From NCBI RefSeq assembly GCF_036588685.1, contig NC_086386.1, positions 52,204,001 through 52,268,000 on the forward strand: DNA of 64,000 nucleotides, given 5' to 3'. This document shows positions 1 through 14,282 of the stretch, one piece after another (positions within the stretch are counted from its first letter, which is position 1; the number at the start of each line of letters is the position of its first letter). The position numbers were made by a program, and so were the translations under genes. Source of the DNA: Mytilus trossulus. Its lineage: Eukaryota. A model generated the notes under the pieces. That model worked only from the letters and a program-made list of their open reading frames with translations, was not told the origin of the DNA and searched no databases.

Positions 1-1583
1 ATATTTCTGTGGAACATGCCAACTATCCAAATAATAAAATTTAGAACGACCCGACTAAAGAGCAGAAAACATCCAAGGCAACGCAATGGGTCTTCAACAC
101 AGCGAGAAATTATGCACTCGTAAGCACGCTTCAGCTGGCTCTAAAACAAAAATGTGTACTTTTTCAATTCAAATGGCGTCTCAGTAATCTCCGAAACATG
201 TAAATAAACTATAAAAAAAAAGAAGACGGAAAAAAGCGAGATGCTACTGACACAAAAATAATTAAAATTGAGAATTATACAAGACAACTTAAAAAGCCCA
301 GAGGCTTCTGACTTGCGTTATGCGCAAGTTAGGCGGGTTTTAACATGTTTTCTGAAATCTCTATCCTCCCTCTATAGATATAGCCATCTTAGAAAAAATC
401 TAACGCACAGCAATACGCGCAGTAAAATTCAGTATAAAAGAAGTCCGGTTCCGATGTTAGAAAAGGTAACAAATGAAACAAGACACAATGATAATGATAC
501 ATAAATTAACGAAATACTACATGTTACTGACATGCCAGCTCCAGATTTCAATTAACTAAATGAAAGACAATTCCCCCCGTTAGGGGTTTACTATCCTACA
601 ATCATGTATACAATTTAAGGAAAAGACCGATTTATTTGAGACGCAATTTCACAAACCATACGAAATCGCAATTATTTGTGTAACATGTACATGATGTATG
701 ACGTATAAATGTCACTGGTGTTTTTTTATTTCCTAAATTTGGCTCTGACACAATTTTTTGTTTCGACAGAAAACTCCATTGTCTAAGAATATATTCAAGT
801 GTGGACCGTCAGCGATCCCGTCATCGATCCGTGTTTTATTCGCCTCCGCGCATGCTCAGTCGACGAACTGCCCTATCAGGCACACCATTAAAAGGTGAAT
901 ATTATATTTTCTATAAACAGGGGTCATTATCGCACCATCGTAATTATATAGGATTGCCACTATATAATTAAATCATCGTCACATTGCTTCTGGTTGTAGT
1001 ATTTTAGTCGATTAGATATTATAAGTAAAAAAAATACAAATACAAGCATACTAGACTTAAAATAAAGTACAGTTTCCAATGCGTTATCCGGCATGCCGTA
1101 AAAAAATGACAAATAAAATAATTGAATTAATAGAGGACGATGCTGTTGATTACAAATTACACCACTAAAAACAAGGCGTAATAATTACTAGTTACATTCA
1201 TTTTGTACTTTATTTCAGTCACGGACCCGGATATTGTTCTAGTAAAATACATAACCCGTACCATGTCAAAAACTGGTTCTAGAATAAATGTGTTTATTTC
1301 CAATGCAAGACCCGATGAGTGAATCAATTTTGATACCAATATGCTATATTTAGTTACCTGATAACAGAATAGCTACTATAAATCTTCTGAGTATATCTGA
1401 TCAAAGGTTTGGTTCGTTTTTTAGGTAAATACCAATATGTCTGTACTTTATATATAATAGTATCATGCACATAAGGTTGAATGTGAAATAGCTGAACGTA
1501 TATCATGTCCTCAAAGTGATTTACATTTACGAATGATTTTCTTGTACCGATCATAAAATTAAGTAAATGTTTTGAATAGTTTG
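1..1583 (-). repeat. Interspersed repeat (PLE-derived 3' region), interrupted at ~630-1243
   Basis: Colinear with 22960-23700 and with the reverse complement of 63440-64000. The 23-kb copy runs into a degenerate PLE RT-thumb motif (YSVYKSQFVRFARVC). Boundaries approximate. Confidence 0.6.
990..1242 (+). mobile_element. Degenerate copy of the 3' part of the non-autonomous Helitron
   Basis: TTCAGTCACGGACCCG..GATAT..TGTTCTAG|T matches the end of 5954-6696, with the hairpin partly deleted. Upstream sequence resembles 6300-6480. Confidence 0.6.
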
Positions 1584-2917
1584 TGATAGCGAAACCCTGG
1601 TGTAATAATTTGTTGGTTATACGAAAAAAGATTTCTTTGAATCAAATATGTTATTTCCTTGTTGAAAAGCTTGGGACAGGTATACAAAAAAATCAAATCA
1701 CTAAAATACTCCGAGAAAAATTCAAAACGGAAAGTTGTTCAGCCACAATTATTTCGTATTGCATTTCTTTAAGAACATAAATGAAAAATAACAAAATACT
1801 ACTGCGCTTTCTCAGTGAAATTTTTACAGTGTGTTGTACCACTTTTAGGACAAATTCTATCAAAATTATAGACAATGCATCGTCTCTAACTCAAAATATG
1901 GACAATTTTATGTTACGGGCGTCTTGAAATCTTTTGACAGCTGGACCAAATCATTACTTTCCTTTACAATTCTGGCCCTACATTGTTTTACAGTGAAATT
2001 TCCCCCTCCCCCGTCCCCCAACTTAAAATTGAGGCATTACAAATAGAGAAATCAATTTGGAAGGGGTGAAAAAATTAATGGCAAGTTACACACTAGGGAC
2101 TATATTCGTGGACAAAGAAAATCAAGGGACGACAATTGTGGTATCGGACTAACACCCTAATCATATAAAGAAAATAGTGGATTGAACTTGGTTTTATAGC
2201 GCTAAACCTCTCACTTTGATGACAATCGCTTTAAATTCATTTATATTTACAACGCTGCGTGAACAAATTAGACATAATAGGTAAAACTATCAAAATAGGG
2301 GTACCTCAGTCATGACAATGTCAAAATCTCAACTATAACAGAATCGAACAAATACTTGTACACACACAAAGCATTACTTAAATTAAACAACCACATTCAT
2401 TGCTTACTGATATATGTATTGTCAATCAACTCGTAAAGGATTGACATATTTGAAGTCCTGTAACTGAATAACAAGGTTTCACATCAACTCTAGAAAAGAG
2501 TCGCGTGTTTAACGTCAAAATGAAAACGACACACAGGATTGATAATCAGAAAAAAATGAATACTTTTGAAATTAAGCAACTACGGCCTGACTTGAGTTCG
2601 CCAACAACTTGTTCAAATCTCGATGTTTTCAGGCTATTATATAATGCCTACCTTAAATCATTTAAAGGCTTCGTGTAGTAATGCTGCATTTTTAAAACAA
2701 GTCGGCAGCTTATTGTTTCGTTCTTTTTAATCTTCGTGTGACGAAAAATATCAGATGGCACCGGGTACCACATGAAGTAATATAAATATTAAGATGACAC
2801 CCCACAGATAACCCTGCGAGAGGCAATATGAACATGGGAATTCAACACGAAACTTAACCATCGCAAGATCTTTGGAAAATATTTTGGCATGCCTTTAATT
2901 TTGCTACCGCTCATTAA

Positions 2918-3657
2918 GGGAGAATTTGCTACGAAATATTAAAAAAAAAATATAATATCATTAATGAAAGTGAATTTATAATTTGCTATAAGCAGCCAGT
3001 ATTGAAAAAATTGTCAAAATAAACCAAGAAGCATTGCTGATGAATTATGATCGAATTTGCTAAAGTGAATAATTCTACCTCCTTGAATCCGTACTCATAT
3101 GTGAACTATAATTTAACTCCTTAGCTAGTGATGAATAATGCATGTATTTTGTATCCTAAGTTCTGTAAAAGAAAATGTTGTCATAATTGATAGCGAAAAA
3201 AGGTAGGTCATTGAATTGACTGATTCGATGGGATCTGTACAAACAAATCGTTCTTATACAGGGAAATACGATGATTTACAGACATTCTTAATTCACAATA
3301 TGAAATTAAACAGATCTAAAGAAAAATCCAATAACATCTGGTCGCTGTAGCAGCATGATTTATTTATTTCTATATTCATGAAAATATCGCTTATATCACA
3401 CTTTTAGGTCATCGGAGGTCAACTCGATGGTTAAGAAGATGATTGGTAATGTCTGTGTCATTGTTGGTCTCTTGTGGACAGTTGTATCATTGATAATCAT
3501 ACCACAACTTCTTTTTTTATATGTGTATACTAAAATGCACACGAAACGACGCTTCATATTATAGAGCCTGTAAATTGTTTATTAAAAACGTTTTATAGTT
3601 TTGATTAATGTTTACATTGTTTTATATCAAATATGGAATTTGACAGCTAGTGGCCCT
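2918..3657. mobile_element. Kolobok-like non-autonomous DNA transposon, old copy
   Basis: Preceded by TTAA, ends GACAGCTAGTGGCCCT, and is colinear with 44699-45382. Confidence 0.55.
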
Positions 3658-4169: not shown

Positions 4170-5760
4170 TGTTACAGTAAATAGGTGAAATTAGGAATTA
4201 CATGTAATTACTAAAATTTAGGAATTACAGGTAATCCCCGATGCACTTAGTTAATACAAGTAATTCCTGAAACGGCCCAGTTATTACCAGTAATTACTAA
4301 TTTTAAAATGAATTTTTACACCTATTTACTGACTGCTAAAACAATGTTGTATTATGGTCAGGTGATCAAAAGTTATGGTAATACTAACTAAAAAATCAGT
4401 TAGTACAGTACAGTAAATTTTGAATGGTTGATTTCTATAAAAAAATATCTTGAATAAATGTGGACTTTCAAATATTTGGTTAAATCCGAGTAACTTTAGT
4501 TTTAATACAAAACGGTTCAAGTTGAGCATTAAACAGATAATTTTTGACAAATTTCAGCAGACATGGAAATCAGAAATTAAAAATTCTCCTAAAGTATAAT
4601 GTTTTAATTTTTTAAAGAAAACTTTGAATTTTAAGAATATTTAGATTTACTACGTTATACAGATAAGATTGTAAAAAAGGTTAAAAACTGGAACGAACTG
4701 TTATGTGCATTAGCTTCGAGATATAATTTTTTTTTTATATTTTTGTTGTTGTTAAATCATTAATAAAAATGATATAGTGAAATTATAATTCACTGTTAGC
4801 AGCCAATCTGGTTATATTTTGTTAAAATAGCTGAGAAACAAGGTTGATAAGTTGTGCACTTACGAGGGAATATTTGGACCTCATTGAATACGTATTCGTG
4901 TGACCTCCAATTCAACCTCTTGCTGGAGATGGGTTATCGCTGTATTTAAAAGCTATTAAAGTTGTAAGGGTTTTGCAGAACAGATAGCCTACTTTTGCTG
5001 TTAATCGCAGGCTCAACAAAAATGAGGGGAAAATATTAAAATTTTAATCTAGATACTATCTTTTGACTAGTACTGTAAGAAACTTCTGTCAAAATTGGGT
5101 AAAAATCCAGGATGGTTTATAAAACCTAATGTTTTAAAAACTTTAACTGCATAGTGTATGAAATGTTAACTGGAGAAAAAAACTCTAGTCTATTTATAAG
5201 TAATATACGAAAAAAAGGATTCGTTTTACAAACTTTACTTTTGGATATTAACTTATGATCATAAAAAATTGCTTCTGTCCATGTTTGGTATAAAACCAGG
5301 ATATTTGGAGAAAGTTATTTTAAAGTTTAAAACCTCATGATGGAGATTTTAGTTTAACCAAATTATTAAAATCAATTTTAGATAGATATCATTGTCCTGC
5401 ATGCATATATTTACAGAGTTTCAAATCCGATAAAACAACTATTTTCCAGTTTCAATTCACAAACATTAAAGAGTATGCACTTTTGATGTGCCTTATATTC
5501 CTACATCCTTAAGTAACTCCCTTAAAATCCCTATCTCTTTACTTTCTTATTTGGTATTTTGAATTATGGTTTTAATTTAAAAACAAAAACATCAAGTTAG
5601 TAAATAGCTGTAAAAATGACCAAAATAATCAGTGATTACCAGTAATCACTGAAACAACTAGTAAATACATGTAATTACTAAATTGGCTAGTAATTACAGG
5701 TATTTACTGAAACGTTTAGTAATTACATGTAATTCCTAATTTCATCTATTTACTGTAACA
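4170..5760. mobile_element. Non-autonomous TIR element (TGTTAC...GTAACA) with subterminal tandem repeats, inserted in (TA)n
   Basis: ~46-bp TIR TGTTACAGTAAATAG(G/A)TGAAATTAGGAATTACATGTAATTACTAAA with 1 mismatch, ~30-bp AATTACANGTAATT units at both ends, and no ORF. Confidence 0.85.
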
Positions 5761-5765
5761 TATAT

Positions 5766-5945
5766 ATATATAACAAGTCTAAAAGAATACAACATCACCA
5801 AAAACACAATAAAACGAACAATTGTGTTTTGGTGATGTTGTATTCTTTCAGACTTGTTATATATTATATTATGTAGTGTACTGCATCATGTTTATATGAT
5901 CCATCGCCCCGTAAGATTTATCGTTGACTATTTATTCAGTCATTT
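5766..5945 (+). mobile_element. Miniature fold-back PLE 3'-end insertion
   Basis: Arms 5766-5810 / 5821-5864 (1 mismatch, 1 indel) with a 10-nt spacer. The tail 5865-5945 is roughly 90% similar to the reverse complement of 6718-6798. Confidence 0.85.
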
Positions 5946-5953
5946 AATATATA

Positions 5954-6696
5954 TCTATAATACTAAAATTACGAGGTCCAATTTGTCAGCCGTCATCACG
6001 TAAAAACGACGAATCAAAGAATTCAACTTTATATATAACTTATATAGTACAAAGGTGTAGATTAAAAATTACACCACTCCAGGCTCTTTTGTTTTCCACA
6101 TAATTAATATTGCCAACAATTAAGAAGTTCCGGGTCGAGTCCGATACCGATACCAATAGTATATTCATCTGTTACCTATTACCTTATCTGTACGTTCCGC
6201 ATTTGACCAGGCGCACCACCAAACGGTGTATTCAGGATGTGCTATATACACGGGTCATACTCACAGGGTTGACACTACTAATTTGTCAAAATGTAACTTA
6301 TTGTAGTATTCTAATCAGTAAGACTTTATAAGATAACAATACGAATACTAAAAATAAGGCGTATAGGTACAGTTTTCAATTTGTTAGCGGGCATGACGTA
6401 AAACAGCGAATCAAATAATTCAACTTTATTTATAACTAATATAGGACAATGCTGTTGATTAAAAAACACTCCATCCCAGGACCTTTTGTTTTCCAAATAA
6501 TTAATATTACCAATAATTGATAAGTTCCAGTTAGGCGGGTTCAAACAGAAAGATTTGAAAGCAGAGAAAACTGTGATAACTATCTTATAATCGGCATGAC
6601 TTTATCAGATGACAATACTAATACAAAAATAAGTCTTGCGCATAGTTATATACTTTAATTCAGTCACGGACCCGCGATATCACGGGTGTGTTCTAG
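5954..6696 (+). mobile_element. Non-autonomous Helitron
   Basis: A|TC 5' end (TCTATAATACTAAAA), CTAG|T 3' end, GC-rich hairpin ACCCGCGATATCACGGGT at 6670-6687, no TSD, and an internal ~150-bp diverged direct repeat. Confidence 0.85.
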
Positions 6697-6857
6697 TATA
6701 TATATATATATATATATAAAATGACTGAATAAATAGTCAACGATCAATCTTACAAGGCGATGGATCATGTAATATGATTCTGTACACTACAAAATATAAT
6801 ATATAACAAGTCAAAAAGGGTACAACATCACCATAAAATAACTATAAAATATACAAA

Positions 6858-6898
6858 TATTAGATATTTCGGATAACAGATATCCTTCTTCAATAATA
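6858..6898 (-). ncRNA. Minimal type-I hammerhead ribozyme variant (mirror copy)
   Basis: Exact reverse complement of 12689-12729. Confidence 0.6.
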
Positions 6899-7441
6899 GC
6901 ACGATGTCAAATGAATCATGTCAATTCAAATTGAGACTCTATCAAAATCTTGATTTATACAATTTAAGCGAACGCTGGAACAATTTTAAAATTTCCAAAC
7001 ACACCGCAAAGACTACAGAAATATGCCAAAAATAAAAATAGTTATTTACGATGTGAAATGGCACAACTTTAGATTTCCAAAGGATGTGACAGTTGAGATG
7101 TAATAACTGCATTGAGGGCAGTCCTCAAACAAAAAAATCAAAATAATCAAAAGTGTCCTTACCGATCCAGGATGGTATAAATTAGACAACGGCAGGGCAA
7201 TTACAACGGAAACTACATATTAAAGCCTTCCAAACGAATAGCAGTCTAATAGTGATTGAAAAAATAAGTTTTGTATATTGAGCTTAAATAATTGAACGTG
7301 GCAACGTACTTATACATCATCCCGAATCAATGAAAACCTGTAATTTAAACGGTAATTTTAAAAATAATTTCGAACTGTAAAGCCAGTACTAAATCCGGCG
7401 TTGTTTAAAACAGGTGGTCACAGAAAAATGAGGGACTCGTT

Positions 7442-9679
7442 CTATGTTTTTTCATTTATGCCCTCTGGGGAGACTGTCCGTAACTTTCTTATCCAAAATC
7501 TTTCCCGAGCGACTCTGTCGACCTTCGACCAACACTCGTTGTGGTCTATGATCGTGATGGTAAGGTTTTTGAGATCAGCTTGTGTGTGTCCAGGTGATCT
7601 CAAATGACGACTTACGGGTAGGTCGGGCTTGCAAGTGTAGTCACTTCGATGACCATTCATGCGTTTGTTAAATGGCTGCTCTGTCTCGCCAACATACTGC
7701 ATGCCACATCGACACTGAAGGAGGTATACAACATTCTGGGTTTTGCAAGTTACATTGCAATATATAGTGTACACAGACCCAGTCGAGTGGCAAGTGAATG
7801 TTTGAGTATTCAGTATTTGTTGACAAGTCAGGCAACGTCTGTTACCACATGACTTGCACCATCCTGCAGTTGAACAGCTTTTATTTGAGGAAACGTCAGC
7901 TCTAACAAATAAGTCTTTCAGACTTGCTGGTCTCCGAAAAGCTAAGACAGGAGGATTAGGAAAGATCTTGGATAATTTAGGGTGTTTGGCAATAGTTTGC
8001 CAATTGGCACGGATCAAACGTGAAAGGTTATTAAAGGCTGGATTGTATGTAAGAACAAACGGGACTATTTTGCTGCGCCTCTTCTGTTTGTACTGTAAGA
8101 GGTCATTGCGGCTGTTATTGTTAGCGCGCGCAAACCCCTTATCTATGTCCAATTTCTTATAACCTCGTTTTGTCAAAAATCCGCGAAGTTCCTGTAACCG
8201 TTTCGTGACAGCCTCCTCAGAGGAGCAAATCCGCTTGACTCTGAGAGCTTGACTGTACGGGATACTTTTTGTACAGTGTTTTGGGTGACAGCTTTGGGGA
8301 GAAAGGTATTGATGTTTATCTGTGGGTTTACAGTAGAGGTCTGTTGATATGACACCGTCCTTTATAGATGTGGTTGTGTCTAAGAAAGATATCTTAGAGT
8401 CGGAAATTTCATACGTAAATTTAATTGAATGGTGGGCGTTGTTTGCATGTCTGATGAAATCATCCAGTTTTTGTTGAGATTCAATCCATTTCATGTCAAC
8501 ATCATCAATGAAACGGAACCAAGACAAAGGTTTGGATAAAGATGTTGCAATAATTTGTTTTTCTAATTTGCCCATGAAAATATTGGCGTAAGACGGTGCC
8601 ATTTTCGTCCCCATCGCTGTCCCGTTAATTTGAAGGTAATGCTCACCATTAAAGGTGAAATTGTTGCATTTCAGGACCAGAGTAAGCAGCTGGACTAAAC
8701 ATTCAGTAGGTGGTTCTAAAATGTTGCGCGAGTCCCATATTTCCCTACAAGATTGTATGCCGTCATCATGAGGTATGTTGGTATACAATGAGGTGACATC
8801 TAAAGTGACAAGGAGGGTTTCCGGAGGAAGAGGGTTCATGGATTCCATTTTACGAAGATAATCTGTAGTGTCTTGAATGTGGGAAGGAAGATTTTCTACA
8901 TGAGATCTTAAATGAAAATCGACGAATTCCGAGATTTTCTCAGTCGGATGGCCGTTTGCGGATACAATGGGTCTACCAGGGTTGTTAACCTTGTGTATTT
9001 TGGGAAGAAGATACAATCGACCAGGCTTGGCATTCTCTGGCTTTAAATAACCAATTGTATCCTCATCTATGTGACCGTCATTGTACATGGTTTGTAACGC
9101 AGTGATAATTTTGGAGCTAAACTCGGAAGTAGGGTCATAGTCTAGCTTCTTATAAAATCTCTCATCAGAGAGCTGACGCACTGCTTCCGCGATGTAGTTA
9201 GCTTTGTCCATTATCACAACGGCACTGCCCTTGTCTGCTGGTTTTATCACAATATCATCTCGGTTTCTCAGCGATTGTATGGCTTTTTTCTCGTCAGGAG
9301 AAGTGTTGTAAAATGACGAGTACTTGTTGCTAGCTAGATGAACAACATCCGATTTGATTTTGTCGATAACATCTTCCAGTGTAGCAGATTTACTAGGTTT
9401 TGGAATCCATGAACTCTTCTTTTTAAAATGCGGAATTATGATTTCTTCCTCCGAGTCAGACGTGGCTGTGTCCTCCTCATTATCCACCTCTTTATCCTTG
9501 TTACCAAAATATTCTTTGATTCTGAGGGTTCTAGCAAAGTTATCAAGGTCATCTCCCAATTTCATATCATCTATGTTATTGGGAGTAGGGCAAAAATTCA
9601 AACCCTTGGACAAGACTTTAGTTTCGTCCTCAGATAAAGAGACGGAGGATAAATTGACAACCGTGTTGTTGGGATCCAT
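7442..9679 (-). CDS. PLE reverse transcriptase-GIY-YIG endonuclease polyprotein (left arm, probably 5'-truncated)
   Basis: Mirror of 9908-12145 with identical translation. The ORF stays open to 9823 (TTG) and the first ATG is at 9679. Confidence 0.93.
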   Translation of the reverse strand: MDPNNTVVNLSSVSLSEDETKVLSKGLNFCPTPNNIDDMKLGDDLDNFARTLRIKEYFGNKDKEVDNEEDTATSDSEEEIIIPHFKKKSSWIPKPSKSATLEDVIDKIKSDVVHLASNKYSSFYNTSPDEKKAIQSLRNRDDIVIKPADKGSAVVIMDKANYIAEAVRQLSDERFYKKLDYDPTSEFSSKIITALQTMYNDGHIDEDTIGYLKPENAKPGRLYLLPKIHKVNNPGRPIVSANGHPTEKISEFVDFHLRSHVENLPSHIQDTTDYLRKMESMNPLPPETLLVTLDVTSLYTNIPHDDGIQSCREIWDSRNILEPPTECLVQLLTLVLKCNNFTFNGEHYLQINGTAMGTKMAPSYANIFMGKLEKQIIATSLSKPLSWFRFIDDVDMKWIESQQKLDDFIRHANNAHHSIKFTYEISDSKISFLDTTTSIKDGVISTDLYCKPTDKHQYLSPQSCHPKHCTKSIPYSQALRVKRICSSEEAVTKRLQELRGFLTKRGYKKLDIDKGFARANNNSRNDLLQYKQKRRSKIVPFVLTYNPAFNNLSRLIRANWQTIAKHPKLSKIFPNPPVLAFRRPASLKDLFVRADVSSNKSCSTAGWCKSCGNRRCLTCQQILNTQTFTCHSTGSVYTIYCNVTCKTQNVVYLLQCRCGMQYVGETEQPFNKRMNGHRSDYTCKPDLPVSRHLRSPGHTQADLKNLTITIIDHNECWSKVDRVARERFWIRKLRTVSPEGINEKT

Positions 9680-9907
9680 CGGAACTCGAATTTTTCTTTT
9701 AAATCTACGATTTCGAGGTTTTTTCTTAGATTTCGTAGAGGGTCTAATTGAAGGGGTGTTAATTTGCACACCATCACGTTTAAATTTGTACAGATCAACA
9801 AATTTAAACGTGATGGTGTGCAAATTAACACCCCTTCAATTAGACCCTCTACGAAATCTAAGAAAAAACCTCGAAATCGTAGATTTAAAAGAAAAATTCG
9901 AGTTCCG

Positions 9908-12145
9908 ATGGATCCCAACAACACGGTTGTCAATTTATCCTCCGTCTCTTTATCTGAGGACGAAACTAAAGTCTTGTCCAAGGGTTTGAATTTTTGCCCT
10001 ACTCCCAATAACATAGATGATATGAAATTGGGAGATGACCTTGATAACTTTGCTAGAACCCTCAGAATCAAAGAATATTTTGGTAACAAGGATAAAGAGG
10101 TGGATAATGAGGAGGACACAGCCACGTCTGACTCGGAGGAAGAAATCATAATTCCGCATTTTAAAAAGAAGAGTTCATGGATTCCAAAACCTAGTAAATC
10201 TGCTACACTGGAAGATGTTATCGACAAAATCAAATCGGATGTTGTTCATCTAGCTAGCAACAAGTACTCGTCATTTTACAACACTTCTCCTGACGAGAAA
10301 AAAGCCATACAATCGCTGAGAAACCGAGATGATATTGTGATAAAACCAGCAGACAAGGGCAGTGCCGTTGTGATAATGGACAAAGCTAACTACATCGCGG
10401 AAGCAGTGCGTCAGCTCTCTGATGAGAGATTTTATAAGAAGCTAGACTATGACCCTACTTCCGAGTTTAGCTCCAAAATTATCACTGCGTTACAAACCAT
10501 GTACAATGACGGTCACATAGATGAGGATACAATTGGTTATTTAAAGCCAGAGAATGCCAAGCCTGGTCGATTGTATCTTCTTCCCAAAATACACAAGGTT
10601 AACAACCCTGGTAGACCCATTGTATCCGCAAACGGCCATCCGACTGAGAAAATCTCGGAATTCGTCGATTTTCATTTAAGATCTCATGTAGAAAATCTTC
10701 CTTCCCACATTCAAGACACTACAGATTATCTTCGTAAAATGGAATCCATGAACCCTCTTCCTCCGGAAACCCTCCTTGTCACTTTAGATGTCACCTCATT
10801 GTATACCAACATACCTCATGATGACGGCATACAATCTTGTAGGGAAATATGGGACTCGCGCAACATTTTAGAACCACCTACTGAATGTTTAGTCCAGCTG
10901 CTTACTCTGGTCCTGAAATGCAACAATTTCACCTTTAATGGTGAGCATTACCTTCAAATTAACGGGACAGCGATGGGGACGAAAATGGCACCGTCTTACG
11001 CCAATATTTTCATGGGCAAATTAGAAAAACAAATTATTGCAACATCTTTATCCAAACCTTTGTCTTGGTTCCGTTTCATTGATGATGTTGACATGAAATG
11101 GATTGAATCTCAACAAAAACTGGATGATTTCATCAGACATGCAAACAACGCCCACCATTCAATTAAATTTACGTATGAAATTTCCGACTCTAAGATATCT
11201 TTCTTAGACACAACCACATCTATAAAGGACGGTGTCATATCAACAGACCTCTACTGTAAACCCACAGATAAACATCAATACCTTTCTCCCCAAAGCTGTC
11301 ACCCAAAACACTGTACAAAAAGTATCCCGTACAGTCAAGCTCTCAGAGTCAAGCGGATTTGCTCCTCTGAGGAGGCTGTCACGAAACGGTTACAGGAACT
11401 TCGCGGATTTTTGACAAAACGAGGTTATAAGAAATTGGACATAGATAAGGGGTTTGCGCGCGCTAACAATAACAGCCGCAATGACCTCTTACAGTACAAA
11501 CAGAAGAGGCGCAGCAAAATAGTCCCGTTTGTTCTTACATACAATCCAGCCTTTAATAACCTTTCACGTTTGATCCGTGCCAATTGGCAAACTATTGCCA
11601 AACACCCTAAATTATCCAAGATCTTTCCTAATCCTCCTGTCTTAGCTTTTCGGAGACCAGCAAGTCTGAAAGACTTATTTGTTAGAGCTGACGTTTCCTC
11701 AAATAAAAGCTGTTCAACTGCAGGATGGTGCAAGTCATGTGGTAACAGACGTTGCCTGACTTGTCAACAAATACTGAATACTCAAACATTCACTTGCCAC
11801 TCGACTGGGTCTGTGTACACTATATATTGCAATGTAACTTGCAAAACCCAGAATGTTGTATACCTCCTTCAGTGTCGATGTGGCATGCAGTATGTTGGCG
11901 AGACAGAGCAGCCATTTAACAAACGCATGAATGGTCATCGAAGTGACTACACTTGCAAGCCCGACCTACCCGTAAGTCGTCATTTGAGATCACCTGGACA
12001 CACACAAGCTGATCTCAAAAACCTTACCATCACGATCATAGACCACAACGAGTGTTGGTCGAAGGTCGACAGAGTCGCTCGGGAAAGATTTTGGATAAGA
12101 AAGTTACGGACAGTCTCCCCAGAGGGCATAAATGAAAAAACATAG
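9908..12145 (+). CDS. PLE reverse transcriptase-GIY-YIG endonuclease polyprotein (right arm, probably 5'-truncated)
   Basis: Motifs: LSKGLNFCPTP, IKPADKG, RPIVS, LDVTSLYTNIP, GTAMGTKMAPSYA, WFRFIDD, thumb HPKHCTKSIPYSQALR, Cys linker CKSCGNRRCLTC, GIY-YIG NVVYLLQCRCGMQYVGET...RERFWI...GIN. The track start at 9764 is a TTG from the opposite arm. First ATG is 9908 (745 aa). Confidence 0.95.
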   Translation: MDPNNTVVNLSSVSLSEDETKVLSKGLNFCPTPNNIDDMKLGDDLDNFARTLRIKEYFGNKDKEVDNEEDTATSDSEEEIIIPHFKKKSSWIPKPSKSATLEDVIDKIKSDVVHLASNKYSSFYNTSPDEKKAIQSLRNRDDIVIKPADKGSAVVIMDKANYIAEAVRQLSDERFYKKLDYDPTSEFSSKIITALQTMYNDGHIDEDTIGYLKPENAKPGRLYLLPKIHKVNNPGRPIVSANGHPTEKISEFVDFHLRSHVENLPSHIQDTTDYLRKMESMNPLPPETLLVTLDVTSLYTNIPHDDGIQSCREIWDSRNILEPPTECLVQLLTLVLKCNNFTFNGEHYLQINGTAMGTKMAPSYANIFMGKLEKQIIATSLSKPLSWFRFIDDVDMKWIESQQKLDDFIRHANNAHHSIKFTYEISDSKISFLDTTTSIKDGVISTDLYCKPTDKHQYLSPQSCHPKHCTKSIPYSQALRVKRICSSEEAVTKRLQELRGFLTKRGYKKLDIDKGFARANNNSRNDLLQYKQKRRSKIVPFVLTYNPAFNNLSRLIRANWQTIAKHPKLSKIFPNPPVLAFRRPASLKDLFVRADVSSNKSCSTAGWCKSCGNRRCLTCQQILNTQTFTCHSTGSVYTIYCNVTCKTQNVVYLLQCRCGMQYVGETEQPFNKRMNGHRSDYTCKPDLPVSRHLRSPGHTQADLKNLTITIIDHNECWSKVDRVARERFWIRKLRTVSPEGINEKT

Positions 12146-12688
12146 AACGAGTCCCTCATTTTTCTGTGACCACCTGTTTTAAACAACGCCGGATTTAGTA
12201 CTGGCTTTACAGTTCGAAATTATTTTTAAAATTACCGTTTAAATTACAGGTTTTCATTGATTCGGGATGATGTATAAGTACGTTGCCACGTTCAATTATT
12301 TAAGCTCAATATACAAAACTTATTTTTTCAATCACTATTAGACTGCTATTCGTTTGGAAGGCTTTAATATGTAGTTTCCGTTGTAATTGCCCTGCCGTTG
12401 TCTAATTTATACCATCCTGGATCGGTAAGGACACTTTTGATTATTTTGATTTTTTTGTTTGAGGACTGCCCTCAATGCAGTTATTACATCTCAACTGTCA
12501 CATCCTTTGGAAATCTAAAGTTGTGCCATTTCACATCGTAAATAACTATTTTTATTTTTGGCATATTTCTGTAGTCTTTGCGGTGTGTTTGGAAATTTTA
12601 AAATTGTTCCAGCGTTCGCTTAAATTGTATAAATCAAGATTTTGATAGAGTCTCAATTTGAATTGACATGATTCATTTGACATCGTGC

Positions 12689-12729
12689 TATTATTGAAGA
12701 AGGATATCTGTTATCCGAAATATCTAATA
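12689..12729 (+). ncRNA. Minimal type-I hammerhead ribozyme variant in the PLE 3' UTR
   Basis: TATTA-TTGAAGA-A-GGATA(tctgt)TATCC-GAAA-TA-TC-TAATA: stem I TATTA/TAATA, stem II GGATA/TATCC, core UUGAAGA (C3U) and GAAA, palindromic AUAU helix III, predicted cut after AUC at 12724. Confidence 0.6.
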
Positions 12730-12808
12730 TTTGTATATTTTATAGTTATTTTATGGTGATGTTGTACCCTTTTTGACTTGTTATATATATATATATATAT
12801 ATATATAT

Positions 12809-14282
12809 TACTAATAAATCCAACATTTCCGGTATGAATAGTTTTAATTCACAGTACTTTCATGTTTAAATAACAATCTTCAGGTGAAACTATACATGAT
12901 TAACGTAACTATTTAACGGTAGGTATGTAACGTCATAGTTGTCGTTGAGTATATAAAGGGAGATAAATCGTATTACACTAAGTCTATATATAGAAGTATG
13001 GAGCGTCATTATTACACAATAGAAAATGCATAGTTTGCATTCAATCGTGATTTAAATTTTAAAATAAAATGTGTTTTCTTGACTTCTCGTGTAATGTCAC
13101 AACCAATATTCATTTTATAAAATGGGAATATTTAAAAAAATCCCCCTCCACATTCGTCTAAATGTTTGCTTAGGGGGATTTTTCTGTATTGTGGCTGCCT
13201 TATATGTTGTCTATGCATGCGCACTCTTTCTGTTACACTGTTCCCTGTTTTGTGGTTGCCGTTTACTTTGTAGAAGTGTTTCTGTATTTATTAAACGGCG
13301 CATATTTTAATCCTGACCTAGAATAGGTAAATTTGCCTTTGCAACGGGAATAATTTTAAAGTTCCGGGGATTATGTGTAATAACGAACGGTATTTTATCG
13401 TTGTTATTACTCTGCTCCTCGCAGGTGGAGCGTAGTTGGTTGGTTGGGATCTGTTTTGCCATTTGAATTCCTCTTTCTATTAAAGGCTCTGGATAGTTTT
13501 GCTTGATCAAAAATAATTGTAGTTCCTCTAGACGGTCTTCTCTCAAATGTTCATCCTCGACTACTGTACATATTTTTCTTGCTAAACAATAGGGGATATT
13601 CCTATTGGTATGAGATGGGTGGCACGAATTAAAATCTAAATACTGATGAGCATGATGAGTATCAGTACCTTTGTAAAAAATATCTGTTTCAATTTCAGTG
13701 CCATCTTTAATAACAAGAATGTCTAGAAACGGTAATTGGTTGAAATTTTCATCCTTCGTAAACTTTATGGAGGTATGAAGGTTATTTAGTATGTCCGAAA
13801 ATAGTTCTTCGTCGGATTTGTTCCAGATAATGAAGCAATCATCAAGGTATCTTTTCCATGATAATTCAAATTCTCTTGCAAATTAAACTCCAAAATTATT
13901 TTCAACTTCTTGATACAGTCTTTGTTCAAGGAAGCCCATGACTAATGTTGCATAGGTTGGTGCAAATTTTGTTCCCATTGCTGTCCCCCGATGTTGCAAA
14001 TAGTTCTTGCCATTGAAATAGCAAGAAGTGTTTTCAAGAATTAGTTTAGTAGAATCGAGTATAAAGTCAACACTGAATCGATTTGGTATTGCATCTCGAT
14101 GTTTTGCAACCCAATATTGTATTGCCTCTATTCCTAAATTGTGTGGAATTTTCGTATATAGGCTTGTGACATCGAAGCTTACTAAACGAGCGTGAACCGG
14201 TGCTATTTTTGGCAGGTGTGAGAGAAAATCTATATCGTCTCTTATATAGCTCGGTACATATTTACATAATGGTTTCAAAATT
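12809..14282 (-). pseudogene. Second, decayed 5'-truncated PLE (RT + GIY-YIG remnant) of a different family
   Basis: FDVTSLYTKIP, GTAMGTKFAPTYA, KIPFVITHNP and a C-terminal PLSKHLDECG...FILKFKSRLN, with stops, frameshifts and a deletion. TA-rich sequence on both flanks. Confidence 0.85.

What the first reader, a model, noticed from the sequence alone, without database searches (positions are those of the whole stretch)
5766..5945. Miniature fold-back PLE with the same asymmetric architecture as the 6-kb palindrome
Seen: (TA)n, short arm (5766-5810), 10-nt loop, long arm (5821-5864), ~80-bp tail ending TTTATTCAGTCATTT, then TA. The tail is about 90% similar to the tail of the big element. In both insertions the short arm stops at the same internal motif, GACTTGTTATATAT, and merges into (TA)n. 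The mini differs from the big one in sequence, arm length (45 vs 2991 bp) and orientation, so it looks like an independent event. Inference: fold-back with a fixed short-arm endpoint is a family property. This is the best internal evidence that the big palindrome is not an assembly artefact.
Basis: partly seen in the sequence, partly recalled or inferred. Interest (0 to 1): 0.8.

Follow-up and report, generated by a model that had tools for sequence, protein, structure and literature searches.

The report
Small Penelope retroelement hairpin insertion in mussel
This is a tiny, real insertion of a young Penelope-like retrotransposon in a mussel (TA)n microsatellite, built as these elements are known to be built: a mirror-image partial copy on one side and an extra "tail" on the other.

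Summary
The anatomy is: (TA)3, then an inverted copy at 5766-5822, then a direct copy at 5821-5864 plus an 81-nt tail at 5865-5945, then (TA)4.

The mini is the 3' end of a 3.5-kb RT + C-terminal GIY-YIG Penelope-like element (PLE). The family has about 900 or more candidate copies. The genome is probably Mytilus trossulus.

I examined the 30 best tail-bearing copies:
- 17 of the 27 I could judge carry an adjacent inverted, tail-less, 5'-truncated copy.
- The outer end of that copy lies at the same TTATATAT|(TA)n point in 14 of the 16 I could judge.
- The two arms of a locus share private variants. They are 99.4-99.96% alike in 12 of 14 loci, against 97-99% to a reference copy. Each fold-back is therefore one event from one template.

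The big palindrome's subfamily shows 5 more head-to-head pairs.

This is, however, the published PLE insertion signature: an inverted 5'-truncated copy plus a one-sided "tail". That signature has been explained in vitro by two RT start sites and by priming from both target strands.

Details that seem new:
- The tail is 81 nt, against the usual 30-40.
- The tail-less copy reaches further 5' in 15 of 18 fold-backs.
- 8 of 18 fold-backs are near-perfect palindromes.

The scan's earlier follow-up on the big palindrome (s1-826662) reached the same classification.

The parts
5760..5765 (.). Upstream remnant of the (TA)n target microsatellite. The boundary with the element's own ATATAT is ambiguous within 5760-5773.
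   Evidence: sequence. The same junction, (TA)n|ATATAACAAGTC, is seen in 13 of 14 other fold-backs.
5766..5822 (-). Inverted, 5'-truncated, tail-less copy of the PLE 3' UTR (reference positions 3456 to 3396).
   Evidence: BLAST to natural copy L031: window 5760-5822, minus, 96.8%. (observed sequence follows the antisense continuation up to ...CGAACAAT).
5821..5864 (+). Body of the direct, 5'-truncated copy (reference 3408-3451). It joins the inverted copy through a 2-nt AT overlap at 5821-5822.
5865..5945 (+). 81-nt 'tail' (reference 3452-3532). It is the 3' end of the element and is present on this arm only.
   Evidence: all 30 copies end ...TTCAGTCATTT followed by (TA)n. The tail is 100% identical in 28 of the 30 copies (the mini itself included).
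5946..5954 (.). Downstream remnant of the (TA)n target (A + (AT)4).
6697..6718 (.). (TA)n next to the 3' end of the neighbouring big element (context).
6719..12788 (-). Big head-to-head PLE dimer from a second subfamily (context). Tail at 6719-6798. Tail-bearing copy at 6799-9789 (minus strand). Tail-less copy at 9790-12788 (plus strand), whose first 8 nt form the 'loop'.
   Evidence: 793-aa ORF with RVT_1. (reference 454-3456 against 461-3532). (contigs of other copies read the natural upstream sequence into 9790).

Best explanation
The mini is one retrotransposition event of a young, active, canonical (C-terminal GIY-YIG) Penelope-like element into a (TA)n microsatellite. The event aborted after about 50-125 nt of cDNA.

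The proposed mechanism has these steps.
1. Both strands of the cut target primed cDNA synthesis on the same RNA.
2. One strand primed at the 3'-terminal start site. That copy carries the 81-nt tail.
3. The other strand primed at an internal start site 81 nt upstream, at the UUAUAUAU tract. That copy lacks the tail and ends up inverted.
4. The two cDNA 3' ends were then joined through a 2-nt overlap, and each was filled in on the other. The result is a head-to-head hairpin with a one-sided tail.

The big 6-kb palindrome is the same product from a sister subfamily, after about 3 kb of synthesis.

Shown here: the anatomy, the fixed outer endpoint, the (TA)n target, and the origin of both arms from one template. 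Inferred: priming from both strands, and two start sites. That inference rests on the in-vitro work on the lizard element PAc.
For: - **Element identity.** A natural unit of 3532 nt has a 928-aa ORF with RVT_1. Its C-terminus visibly carries CxxC...CxxC and a GIY-YIG-like core. Relatives at 54% identity over residues 680-928 carry Pfam GIY-YIG PF01541.
- **Tandem partial copies (pLTR arrangement).** Seen in L031, L035 and L045, and as arrays with about 3530-nt spacing.
- **3' end and target.** 30 of 30 copies end at TCATTT and abut (TA)n.
- **Inverted partner.** 17 of 27 judged copies have an inverted tail-less partner. 14 of 16 judged outer ends lie at reference 3451-3456. independently shows tail-less arms ending at query positions 687 and 682, which correspond to reference 3456 and 3451.
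- **Orientation.** All 8 opposite-strand pairs in subfamily A and all 6 in subfamily B are head-to-head. In each of the 6 B pairs only one member appears in the tail-containing hit list.
- **One template.** Arms are 99.4-99.96% alike in 12 of 14 loci, while each arm is 97-99% alike to the reference.
- **Junctions.** Inner junctions show 0-6 nt overlaps or 5-11 nt fillers.
- **Literature (passages seen).** PLE insertions often have an adjacent inverted 5'-truncated copy, a 30-40-bp tail at one end only, and a (TA)n bias (PMC8557442). The same is reported for rotifer elements, with palindromes at the inverted junction (PMC3846280). Purified PAc protein cleaves and extends both strands and starts reverse transcription at two sites whose spacing is the tail (PMC11167929).
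Against: - Nothing here observes the priming itself.
- No empty site or target-site duplication could be seen.
- Reads were swamped by other copies. No listed piece spans the mini or the big centre.
- Pfam finds only RVT_1 in this protein, not GIY-YIG.
- No hammerhead ribozyme was found at E <= 1, although canonical C-terminal-EN PLEs usually have one.
- The tail is 81 nt, not 30-40.
- 9 of 27 copies have no inverted partner. Two outer ends deviate (L044 at about 3478; L025 at 3441).
- The sample is the top-scoring 30 of 890 candidates, so it is biased towards young copies.
- The mini's two arms differ at 2 of 44 positions. One of these (T4/T5) is polymorphic in the family, so two different templates cannot be excluded for the mini itself.
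Confidence: 0.85

Rival explanations
1. Snap-back (self-priming) of a single cDNA. The nascent cDNA folds back on itself and copies itself, giving the hairpin.
For: - Self-priming was proposed for PLE palindromic junctions (PMC3846280, passage).
- 8 of 18 fold-backs are near-perfect palindromes.
- L038 has a zero-length loop at a natural CG.
Against: Loop polarity is wrong for this model. In 15 of 18 fold-backs the central unpaired stretch continues the tail-less copy (for the big element, the loose end at 9790).

- If the tail-bearing cDNA snapped back, the loop would belong to that copy instead.
- If the tail-less cDNA snapped back, the product could not contain the 81-nt tail.

Ten of the 18 fold-backs have inner ends 72-1105 nt apart, which no snap-back gives.
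Confidence: 0.07
2. Two independent insertions in opposite orientation into the same (TA)n microsatellite, or a later DNA-level rearrangement of a simple insertion.
For: - (TA)n tracts are reused targets. The mini and the big element lie about 750 nt apart.
- L045 is an inverted pair of tandem arrays in which every unit carries a tail.
- L043 and L044 have arms only 97.6% and 95.5% alike.
Against: - Arms share private variants in 12 of 14 loci.
- The inverted copy lacks the tail and ends at one fixed site in 14 of 16. An ordinary second insertion would carry its tail next to the flank.
- The 5'-truncated ends abut directly, with overlaps of a few nucleotides.
Confidence: 0.04
3. A foldback or MITE-type DNA transposon with 45-bp terminal inverted repeats, or an assembly artefact.
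For: - The structure is a hairpin with AT-rich flanks.
- The big element's arms are 100% identical with an 8-nt centre. That pattern resembles long-read chimeras.
Against: - The arms are the 3' UTR of an RT-encoding element.
- Arm lengths differ at every locus, from 44 to 2991 nt.
- There is a one-sided tail and an element-specific outer end.
- The unique flanks differ on the two sides.
- The hairpin is only about 100 nt, well inside any read length.
- The big element's subfamily has 100% (rounded) identical copies at about 18 other places, so perfect arms are expected for a recent event.
Confidence: 0.03

Closest known systems
Canonical EN+ Penelope-like element insertion architecture (Penelope/Poseidon, Neptune, Nematis; also Naiad), as described by Arkhipova and co-workers
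   Same: [quoted passage not shown]
- Heavy 5' truncation.
- Partial tandem copies (pseudo-LTRs).
- An adjacent inverted 5'-truncated copy.
- An extension ('tail') at only one end.
- A (TA)n insertion bias.

The published description comes from passages of PMC8557442 and PMC3846280.
   Different: - The tail is 81 nt here, against the 30-40 bp reported.
- No hammerhead ribozyme was detected by Rfam.
- Clade assignment is by eye only. The CxxC linker plus CCHH-like residues suggest Neptune or Nematis type. No phylogeny was run.
PAc (Poseidon of Anolis carolinensis) in-vitro reaction, Frangieh et al. 2024 (PMC11167929; passages seen)
   Same: Two reverse-transcription start sites internal to the RNA, whose spacing equals the genomic tail. 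The protein cleaves and extends both target strands. This is exactly what a head-to-head dimer with a one-sided tail requires.
   Different: [quoted passage not shown]
- Here the internal site is a (TA)3.5 tract, the terminal site is followed by AATAT in tandem copies, and the target is (TA)n. Base-pairing could therefore guide priming, but this was not tested.
- Nothing was measured in vitro here.
Twin priming of human L1 (inversion with 5' truncation).
   Same: The second target strand primes cDNA on the element RNA. The two cDNAs are joined through microhomology. The product has an inverted 5' segment.
   Different: - L1 twin priming copies different parts of one RNA, giving an inversion without duplication.
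- Here both cDNAs copy the same region, giving a palindrome.
- Here both start at defined sites 81 nt apart near the 3' end.
Foldback transposons and MITEs
   Same: Hairpin-forming inverted arms in AT-rich DNA.
   Different: - No conserved pair of termini.
- No target-site duplication seen.
- The arms are retroelement 3' UTR.
- Arm length varies at every locus.
- One-sided tail.

Membership tests
Penelope-like elements (EN+) | Reverse transcriptase domain | tested here: met
   RVT_1 at E = 1.3e-09 in the big element's 793-aa ORF. RVT_1 at E = 5.1e-10 in the 928-aa ORF of the mini's subfamily. A PLE-specific RT phylogeny was not run.
Penelope-like elements (EN+) | GIY-YIG endonuclease fused to the RT (C-terminal in canonical clades) | tested here: inconclusive
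   Pfam gives no GIY-YIG hit on this protein at E <= 0.1. The translation shows ...VVYILQCRCGMQYVGET...R...H... after a CKSC...CLTC linker (read by eye). Relatives at 54% and 41% identity over residues 680-928 (P0002, P0007) carry precomputed PF01541.
Penelope-like elements (EN+) | Partial tandem copies forming pseudo-LTRs | tested here: met
   In L031, L035 and L045 a full 3532-nt unit is directly preceded by a 5'-truncated copy. Arrays with about 3530-nt spacing appear.
Penelope-like elements (EN+) | Adjacent inverted 5'-truncated copy | tested here: met
   17 of 27 judged tail-bearing copies. 8 of 8 pairs in subfamily A and 6 of 6 pairs in subfamily B are head-to-head.
Penelope-like elements (EN+) | Short extension ('tail') at only one end of the insertion | tested here: met
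   14 of 16 inverted copies stop 76-81 nt short of the 3' end, at reference 3451-3456. The tail is 81 nt, longer than the published 30-40 bp.
Penelope-like elements (EN+) | Hammerhead ribozyme motif in the pLTR (typical of canonical clades, absent from Naiad) | tested here: not met
   No hammerhead family at E <= 1 in window 5000-13500, nor in the full unit with its flanks, L031 600-5300. CTGANGA words exist but were not tested for folding. Minimal PLE-type hammerheads may escape Rfam models.
Neptune/Nematis-type PLE clade | CX2-5CxxC zinc-finger-like linker upstream of the EN, plus a CCHH motif inside the GIY-YIG core. The definition is taken from PMC8557442 passages. | tested here: inconclusive
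   A CKSCGNKRCLTC string and C/H residues within the EN core are visible in the translation. There is no alignment to clade references and no tree. That paper's supplementary family lists were not available.
Foldback / MITE DNA transposon | Conserved terminal inverted repeats on both ends with a target-site duplication, and copies of uniform structure | tested here: not met
   The two ends are not equivalent (one-sided tail). The inner break-points differ at all 18 fold-backs. No target-site duplication is discernible in (TA)n.

The most novel reading that the evidence does not exclude
Two reverse transcriptases may travel in convoy on one RNA.

1. The (TA)n 3' ends of the two cut target strands base-pair with two TA-rich sites on the RNA. 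These are the internal UUAUAUAU tract and the terminal UUUAAUAU. The 81-nt tail is then simply the spacing between two primer-alignment sites, in a telomerase-like way.
2. The RT primed at the internal site leads, and the one primed at the terminal site trails and cannot overtake. This would explain why the tail-less copy reaches further 5' in 15 of 18 fold-backs.
3. It would also explain why 8 of 18 are near-perfect palindromes with 0-33-nt offsets. The trailing enzyme catches up when the leader stops, and the two ends are then joined.

A bolder corollary is that part of the flanking (TA)n is synthesised by reiterative copying at these sites.
Probability: 0.25. Interest if true: 0.55.

Novelty: new member of a known kind. 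Interest (0 to 1): 0.3.

Why it matters
For the scan, this settles two things.
- The mini hairpin and the 6-kb palindrome beside it are genuine products of PLE retrotransposition. They are not assembly errors and not a new class of mobile element.
- Such palindromes should be expected throughout this mussel genome.

For PLE biology the mechanism of tandem and inverted insertion is still called undefined in the literature. This very young, high-copy family gives an unusually clean natural data set.
- It has a fixed tail-less endpoint.
- Both arms of a fold-back come from one template.
- There is a strong directional bias in which arm is longer.
- There is an excess of near-perfect palindromes.

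These are quantitative constraints that any model of two-strand priming must meet. They can be tested in the in-vitro system that now exists for another PLE.

Tried and rejected
- **Rfam** on the window stretch and on a full unit. It returned only spurious miRNA-type hits caused by the hairpins, and no hammerhead.
- **RNA fold of the arm end plus tail**. The z-score is -1.06, so there is no evidence of a conserved 3' structure.
- **TATATA depletion.** The tract at the endpoint is the only TATATA in the 3532-nt unit. The expectation is only 1.2-3, so this is not significant. Subfamily B has a second TATATAT tract at position 2032 of its long arm that was not used as the endpoint in the big element (n = 1). 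I therefore could not separate 'specific start site' from 'microhomology with (TA)n'.
- **An apparent recurrent 'filler' (CGGGAAAG)** at inner junctions turned out to be element sequence at reference 2742-2750.
- **Flank repeats as old PLE arms.** I tested whether the recurrent flank repeats next to (TA)n are old PLE arms. Local alignment scores of 25-27 lie within the shuffle range, so I rejected this.
- **PDB sequence search** with the ORF found nothing.
- **Reads**. The 24 listed runs hold at most 0.55 of the sampled words. Coverage over the element parts comes from other copies. No listed piece bridges the mini or the centre at 9790-9797, and no empty-site joint was seen. The only use was the set of loose ends at 9790, which show that the 8-nt centre is natural element sequence.
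- **Supplements.** The supplementary tables of PMC8557442 (its family lists) were not consulted. They may show that this mussel family is already catalogued.

Full report
**What is there**

Searches show the following layout.
- (AT)n at 5760-5771.
- An inverted repeat with an ungapped core at 5766-5803 / 5827-5864 (38 nt, 97%). With one 1-nt indel it extends to 5766-5810 / 5821-5864.
- An 81-nt stretch at 5865-5945 ending TTTATTCAGTCATTT.
- AATATATAT after that.

About 750 nt downstream lies the big palindrome. Its arms are 6799-9789 and 9798-12788, 100% complementary, with 8 nt between them. A 793-aa ORF on the minus strand carries RVT_1 and reads towards 6719. The roughly 80 nt at 6719-6798 are therefore the 3' end of that copy. 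They are absent from the other arm, which ends GACTTGTTATATAT followed by (TA)n at 12775-12808.

The mini's direct arm plus tail is homologous to that 3' end at 85-91%.

**Which element it is**

A search of the window's own genome with 5821-5959 gave 890 candidates. Forty were scored, and 39 of the 40 near-full matches were 96-99% identical; the fortieth is the query's own place.

The genome has 1.3 Gb in 541 contigs. It is probably Mytilus trossulus. A homologue named from that species sits on a contig of 81,773,519 bases, exactly the length of the window's contig C14.

A natural full unit (L031) is 3532 nt, with a 928-aa ORF.
- Pfam sees RVT_1 only.
- The C-terminus shows a CxxC...CxxC linker and a GIY-YIG-like core by eye.
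- Relatives at 54% identity over that region carry Pfam GIY-YIG.

Full units are preceded by 5'-truncated tandem copies and form arrays with about 3530-nt spacing. This is a canonical C-terminal-endonuclease Penelope-like element.

The mini belongs to subfamily A, which is 97-100% alike among the copies examined. The big palindrome belongs to subfamily B, which is about 87% alike to A. Subfamily B has copies at 100% (rounded) identity over 724 nt at about 18 other places. The two are independent events by two active lineages.

I took the 30 top-scoring tail-bearing places (L001-L030). Twenty-one of them (L002-L022) lie within the twenty 10-kb stretches that I fetched. The rest have 1.5 kb each side.

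All 30 copies end at TCATTT and abut (TA)n, followed by unrelated flanks. The base after TCATTT is A in 12, T in 16 and C in 2. The tail is 100% identical in 28 of 30.

Layout against the natural reference:

| Class | Count | Places |
|---|---|---|
| Adjacent inverted, 5'-truncated, tail-less copy | 17 | L001, 2, 3, 5, 7, 10, 11, 12, 13, 15, 16, 18, 19, 21, 22, 24, 25 |
| Inverted pair of tandem arrays, all units with tails | 1 | L017 |
| No inverted partner | 9 | L004, 6, 8, 9, 14, 20, 26, 27, 28 |
| Copy runs off the fetched flank (not judged) | 3 | L023, 29, 30 |

The outer end of the inverted copy could be read in 16 of the 17.
- In 14 it is at reference 3451-3456, that is TTATATAT merging into (TA)n.
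- L016 (seen in L044) ends at about 3478 and is old (arms 95.5% alike).
- L025 ends at 3441, against an older diverged copy.

Searches without letters add to this.
- A tail-including query shows two tail-less arms stopping at query positions 687 and 682, which are reference 3456 and 3451.
- All 8 opposite-strand pairs in subfamily A and all 6 in subfamily B are head-to-head.
- In each of the 6 B pairs only one member appears among the tail-containing hits. This is indirect, because only 40 candidates are scored per search.

**One event, one template**

Within a locus the two arms are 99.4-99.96% alike in 12 of 14 cases, while each arm is 97-99% alike to the reference. L038, for example, has 0 mismatches over 2240 nt, against 21 mismatches from each arm to the reference. 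The inner break-points differ at every locus. The structures are therefore made anew at each insertion and are not copied from a master fold-back.

Arm lengths are given below as tail-less copy / tail-bearing body, in nt, measured to reference 3451.

| Locus | Tail-less / tail-bearing | Note |
|---|---|---|
| mini | 56 / 44 | |
| L032 | 97 / 90 | |
| L025 | 150 / 88 | |
| L040 | 325 / 350 | |
| L041 | 512 / 798 | |
| L034 | 611 / 610 | 106-nt extra piece at the centre |
| L043 | 628 / 407 | |
| L031 | 703 / 148 | |
| L044 | about 703 / 151 | |
| L047 | 1053 / 711 | |
| L049 | 1072 / 1061 | |
| L050 | 1174 / 1141 | |
| L036 | 1365 / 1267 | |
| L024 | at least 1426 / 1345 | |
| L039 | 1700 / 1492 | |
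| L046 | 1708 / 603 | |
| L038 | 2234 / 2234 | |
| big element | 2999 / 2991 | |

**The centre**

The 'loops' are templated.
- In the mini the inverted copy continues as natural antisense sequence to 5822. It meets the direct copy at a 2-nt AT overlap.
- In the big element the 8 nt match the natural continuation of the tail-less (plus-strand) copy. This follows from the reference. It also follows from contigs of other copies that read natural upstream sequence into position 9790 (loose ends in X1 and X6).

Across 18 fold-backs the tail-less copy reaches further 5' in 15, ties in 1 (L038), and is shorter in 2 (L040 by 25 nt, L041 by 286 nt). My own two-sided sign test on 15 of 17 gives p of about 0.002.

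Eight of the 18 are near-symmetric, with an offset of at most 33 nt. Junctions are of three kinds:
- overlaps of 1-6 nt in 8 fold-backs;
- fillers or local stutters of 5-11 nt in 8 fold-backs;
- blunt in 1 fold-back.

**Mechanism**

Simple snap-back does not fit the loop polarity.
- If the tail-bearing cDNA snapped back, the loop would belong to that copy.
- If the tail-less cDNA snapped back, the product could not contain the tail.

Two cDNAs made on the same template fit all the observations. One is primed by each target strand, starting 81 nt apart, and the two are joined at their 3' ends.

This is what the literature already proposes or shows for PLEs, in passages I read:
- an inverted 5'-truncated copy next to the insertion, and a 30-40-bp tail at one end (PMC8557442);
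- the same in rotifer elements, with palindromes at the inverted junction (PMC3846280);
- in vitro, a lizard PLE protein that cleaves and extends both strands. It starts reverse transcription at two internal sites whose spacing corresponds to the tail (PMC11167929).

[quoted passage not shown] The L1 twin-priming comparison is recalled.

**What remains open**

- The internal start site coincides with the only TATATA tract of the unit, and the target is (TA)n. Priming could therefore be guided by base-pairing, unlike what is reported for PAc. The tract count is not significantly low, and I could not separate the alternatives.
- No hammerhead was found.
- Reads did not verify either structure directly.
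- The sample is 30 of about 900 candidates, chosen by score.

**Verdict**

The phenomenon is the known insertion signature of Penelope-like elements, seen here in a very young mussel family with an unusually long tail.

The directional bias and the excess of near-perfect palindromes are useful constraints on the mechanism, not a new kind of element.

The scan's earlier follow-up on the big palindrome (s1-826662) reached the same classification. I re-derived that classification from my own calls.

Noticed in passing
window 5615-5741: Directly upstream of the mini lies a 29-nt unit repeated about four times (69-79% alike). It also forms 42-54-nt inverted repeats (D2, D3, I2, I4). Its nature is unknown.
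   Followed up: no
window 5835-6669: The stretch between the two PLE insertions holds a 129-nt direct repeat (6003-6131 / 6400-6528, 84%, D1). It has by far the highest depth in all four runs laid. It is therefore another very high-copy repeat family.
   Followed up: no
L034 (G000:C7:4103353-4113352), oriented positions 7880-9286: A near-symmetric fold-back (inner ends at reference 2841 / 2842). An extra 106-nt direct piece of the 3' region (reference 3384-3489) sits at the centre, joined by 2-3-nt overlaps. It looks like an additional template jump.
   Followed up: partly
G000:C8:23278060-23278916: A tail-to-tail arrangement. A direct copy ends at the normal 3' end and is followed within 2 nt by an inverted piece covering reference 3487 to 3394. 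The sequence was not fetched.
   Followed up: no
L031 (G000:C5) and L044 (G000:C5:20454982-20464981): Two different loci share almost the same pair of inner break-points (about 2750 and about 3301-3304) but have different fillers. The two sites share an AAAG-TTTTG-GATA-like word, which suggests a recurrent microhomology jump.
   Followed up: partly
flanks of L005, L011, L017, L021, L026, L027, L030, L031, L034, L040, L046, L050: Two repeat families that carry (TA)n at one end recur as insertion flanks. In L034 the same repeat flanks the insertion on both sides in inverted orientation. Their resemblance to the PLE arm end is not significant.
   Followed up: partly
G000:C40:1096023-1111589 and G000:C13:16144700-16156051: There are long tandem arrays of full units with about 3530-nt spacing. 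The C40 locus has three minus-strand units facing two plus-strand units head-to-head, and all the units listed carry tails.
   Followed up: partly
window 5800-5850: The mini's two arms differ by one substitution and by a T4/T5 run length that is polymorphic among family copies. At the 12 other loci where both arms could be read, the two arms agree at that run.
   Followed up: partly
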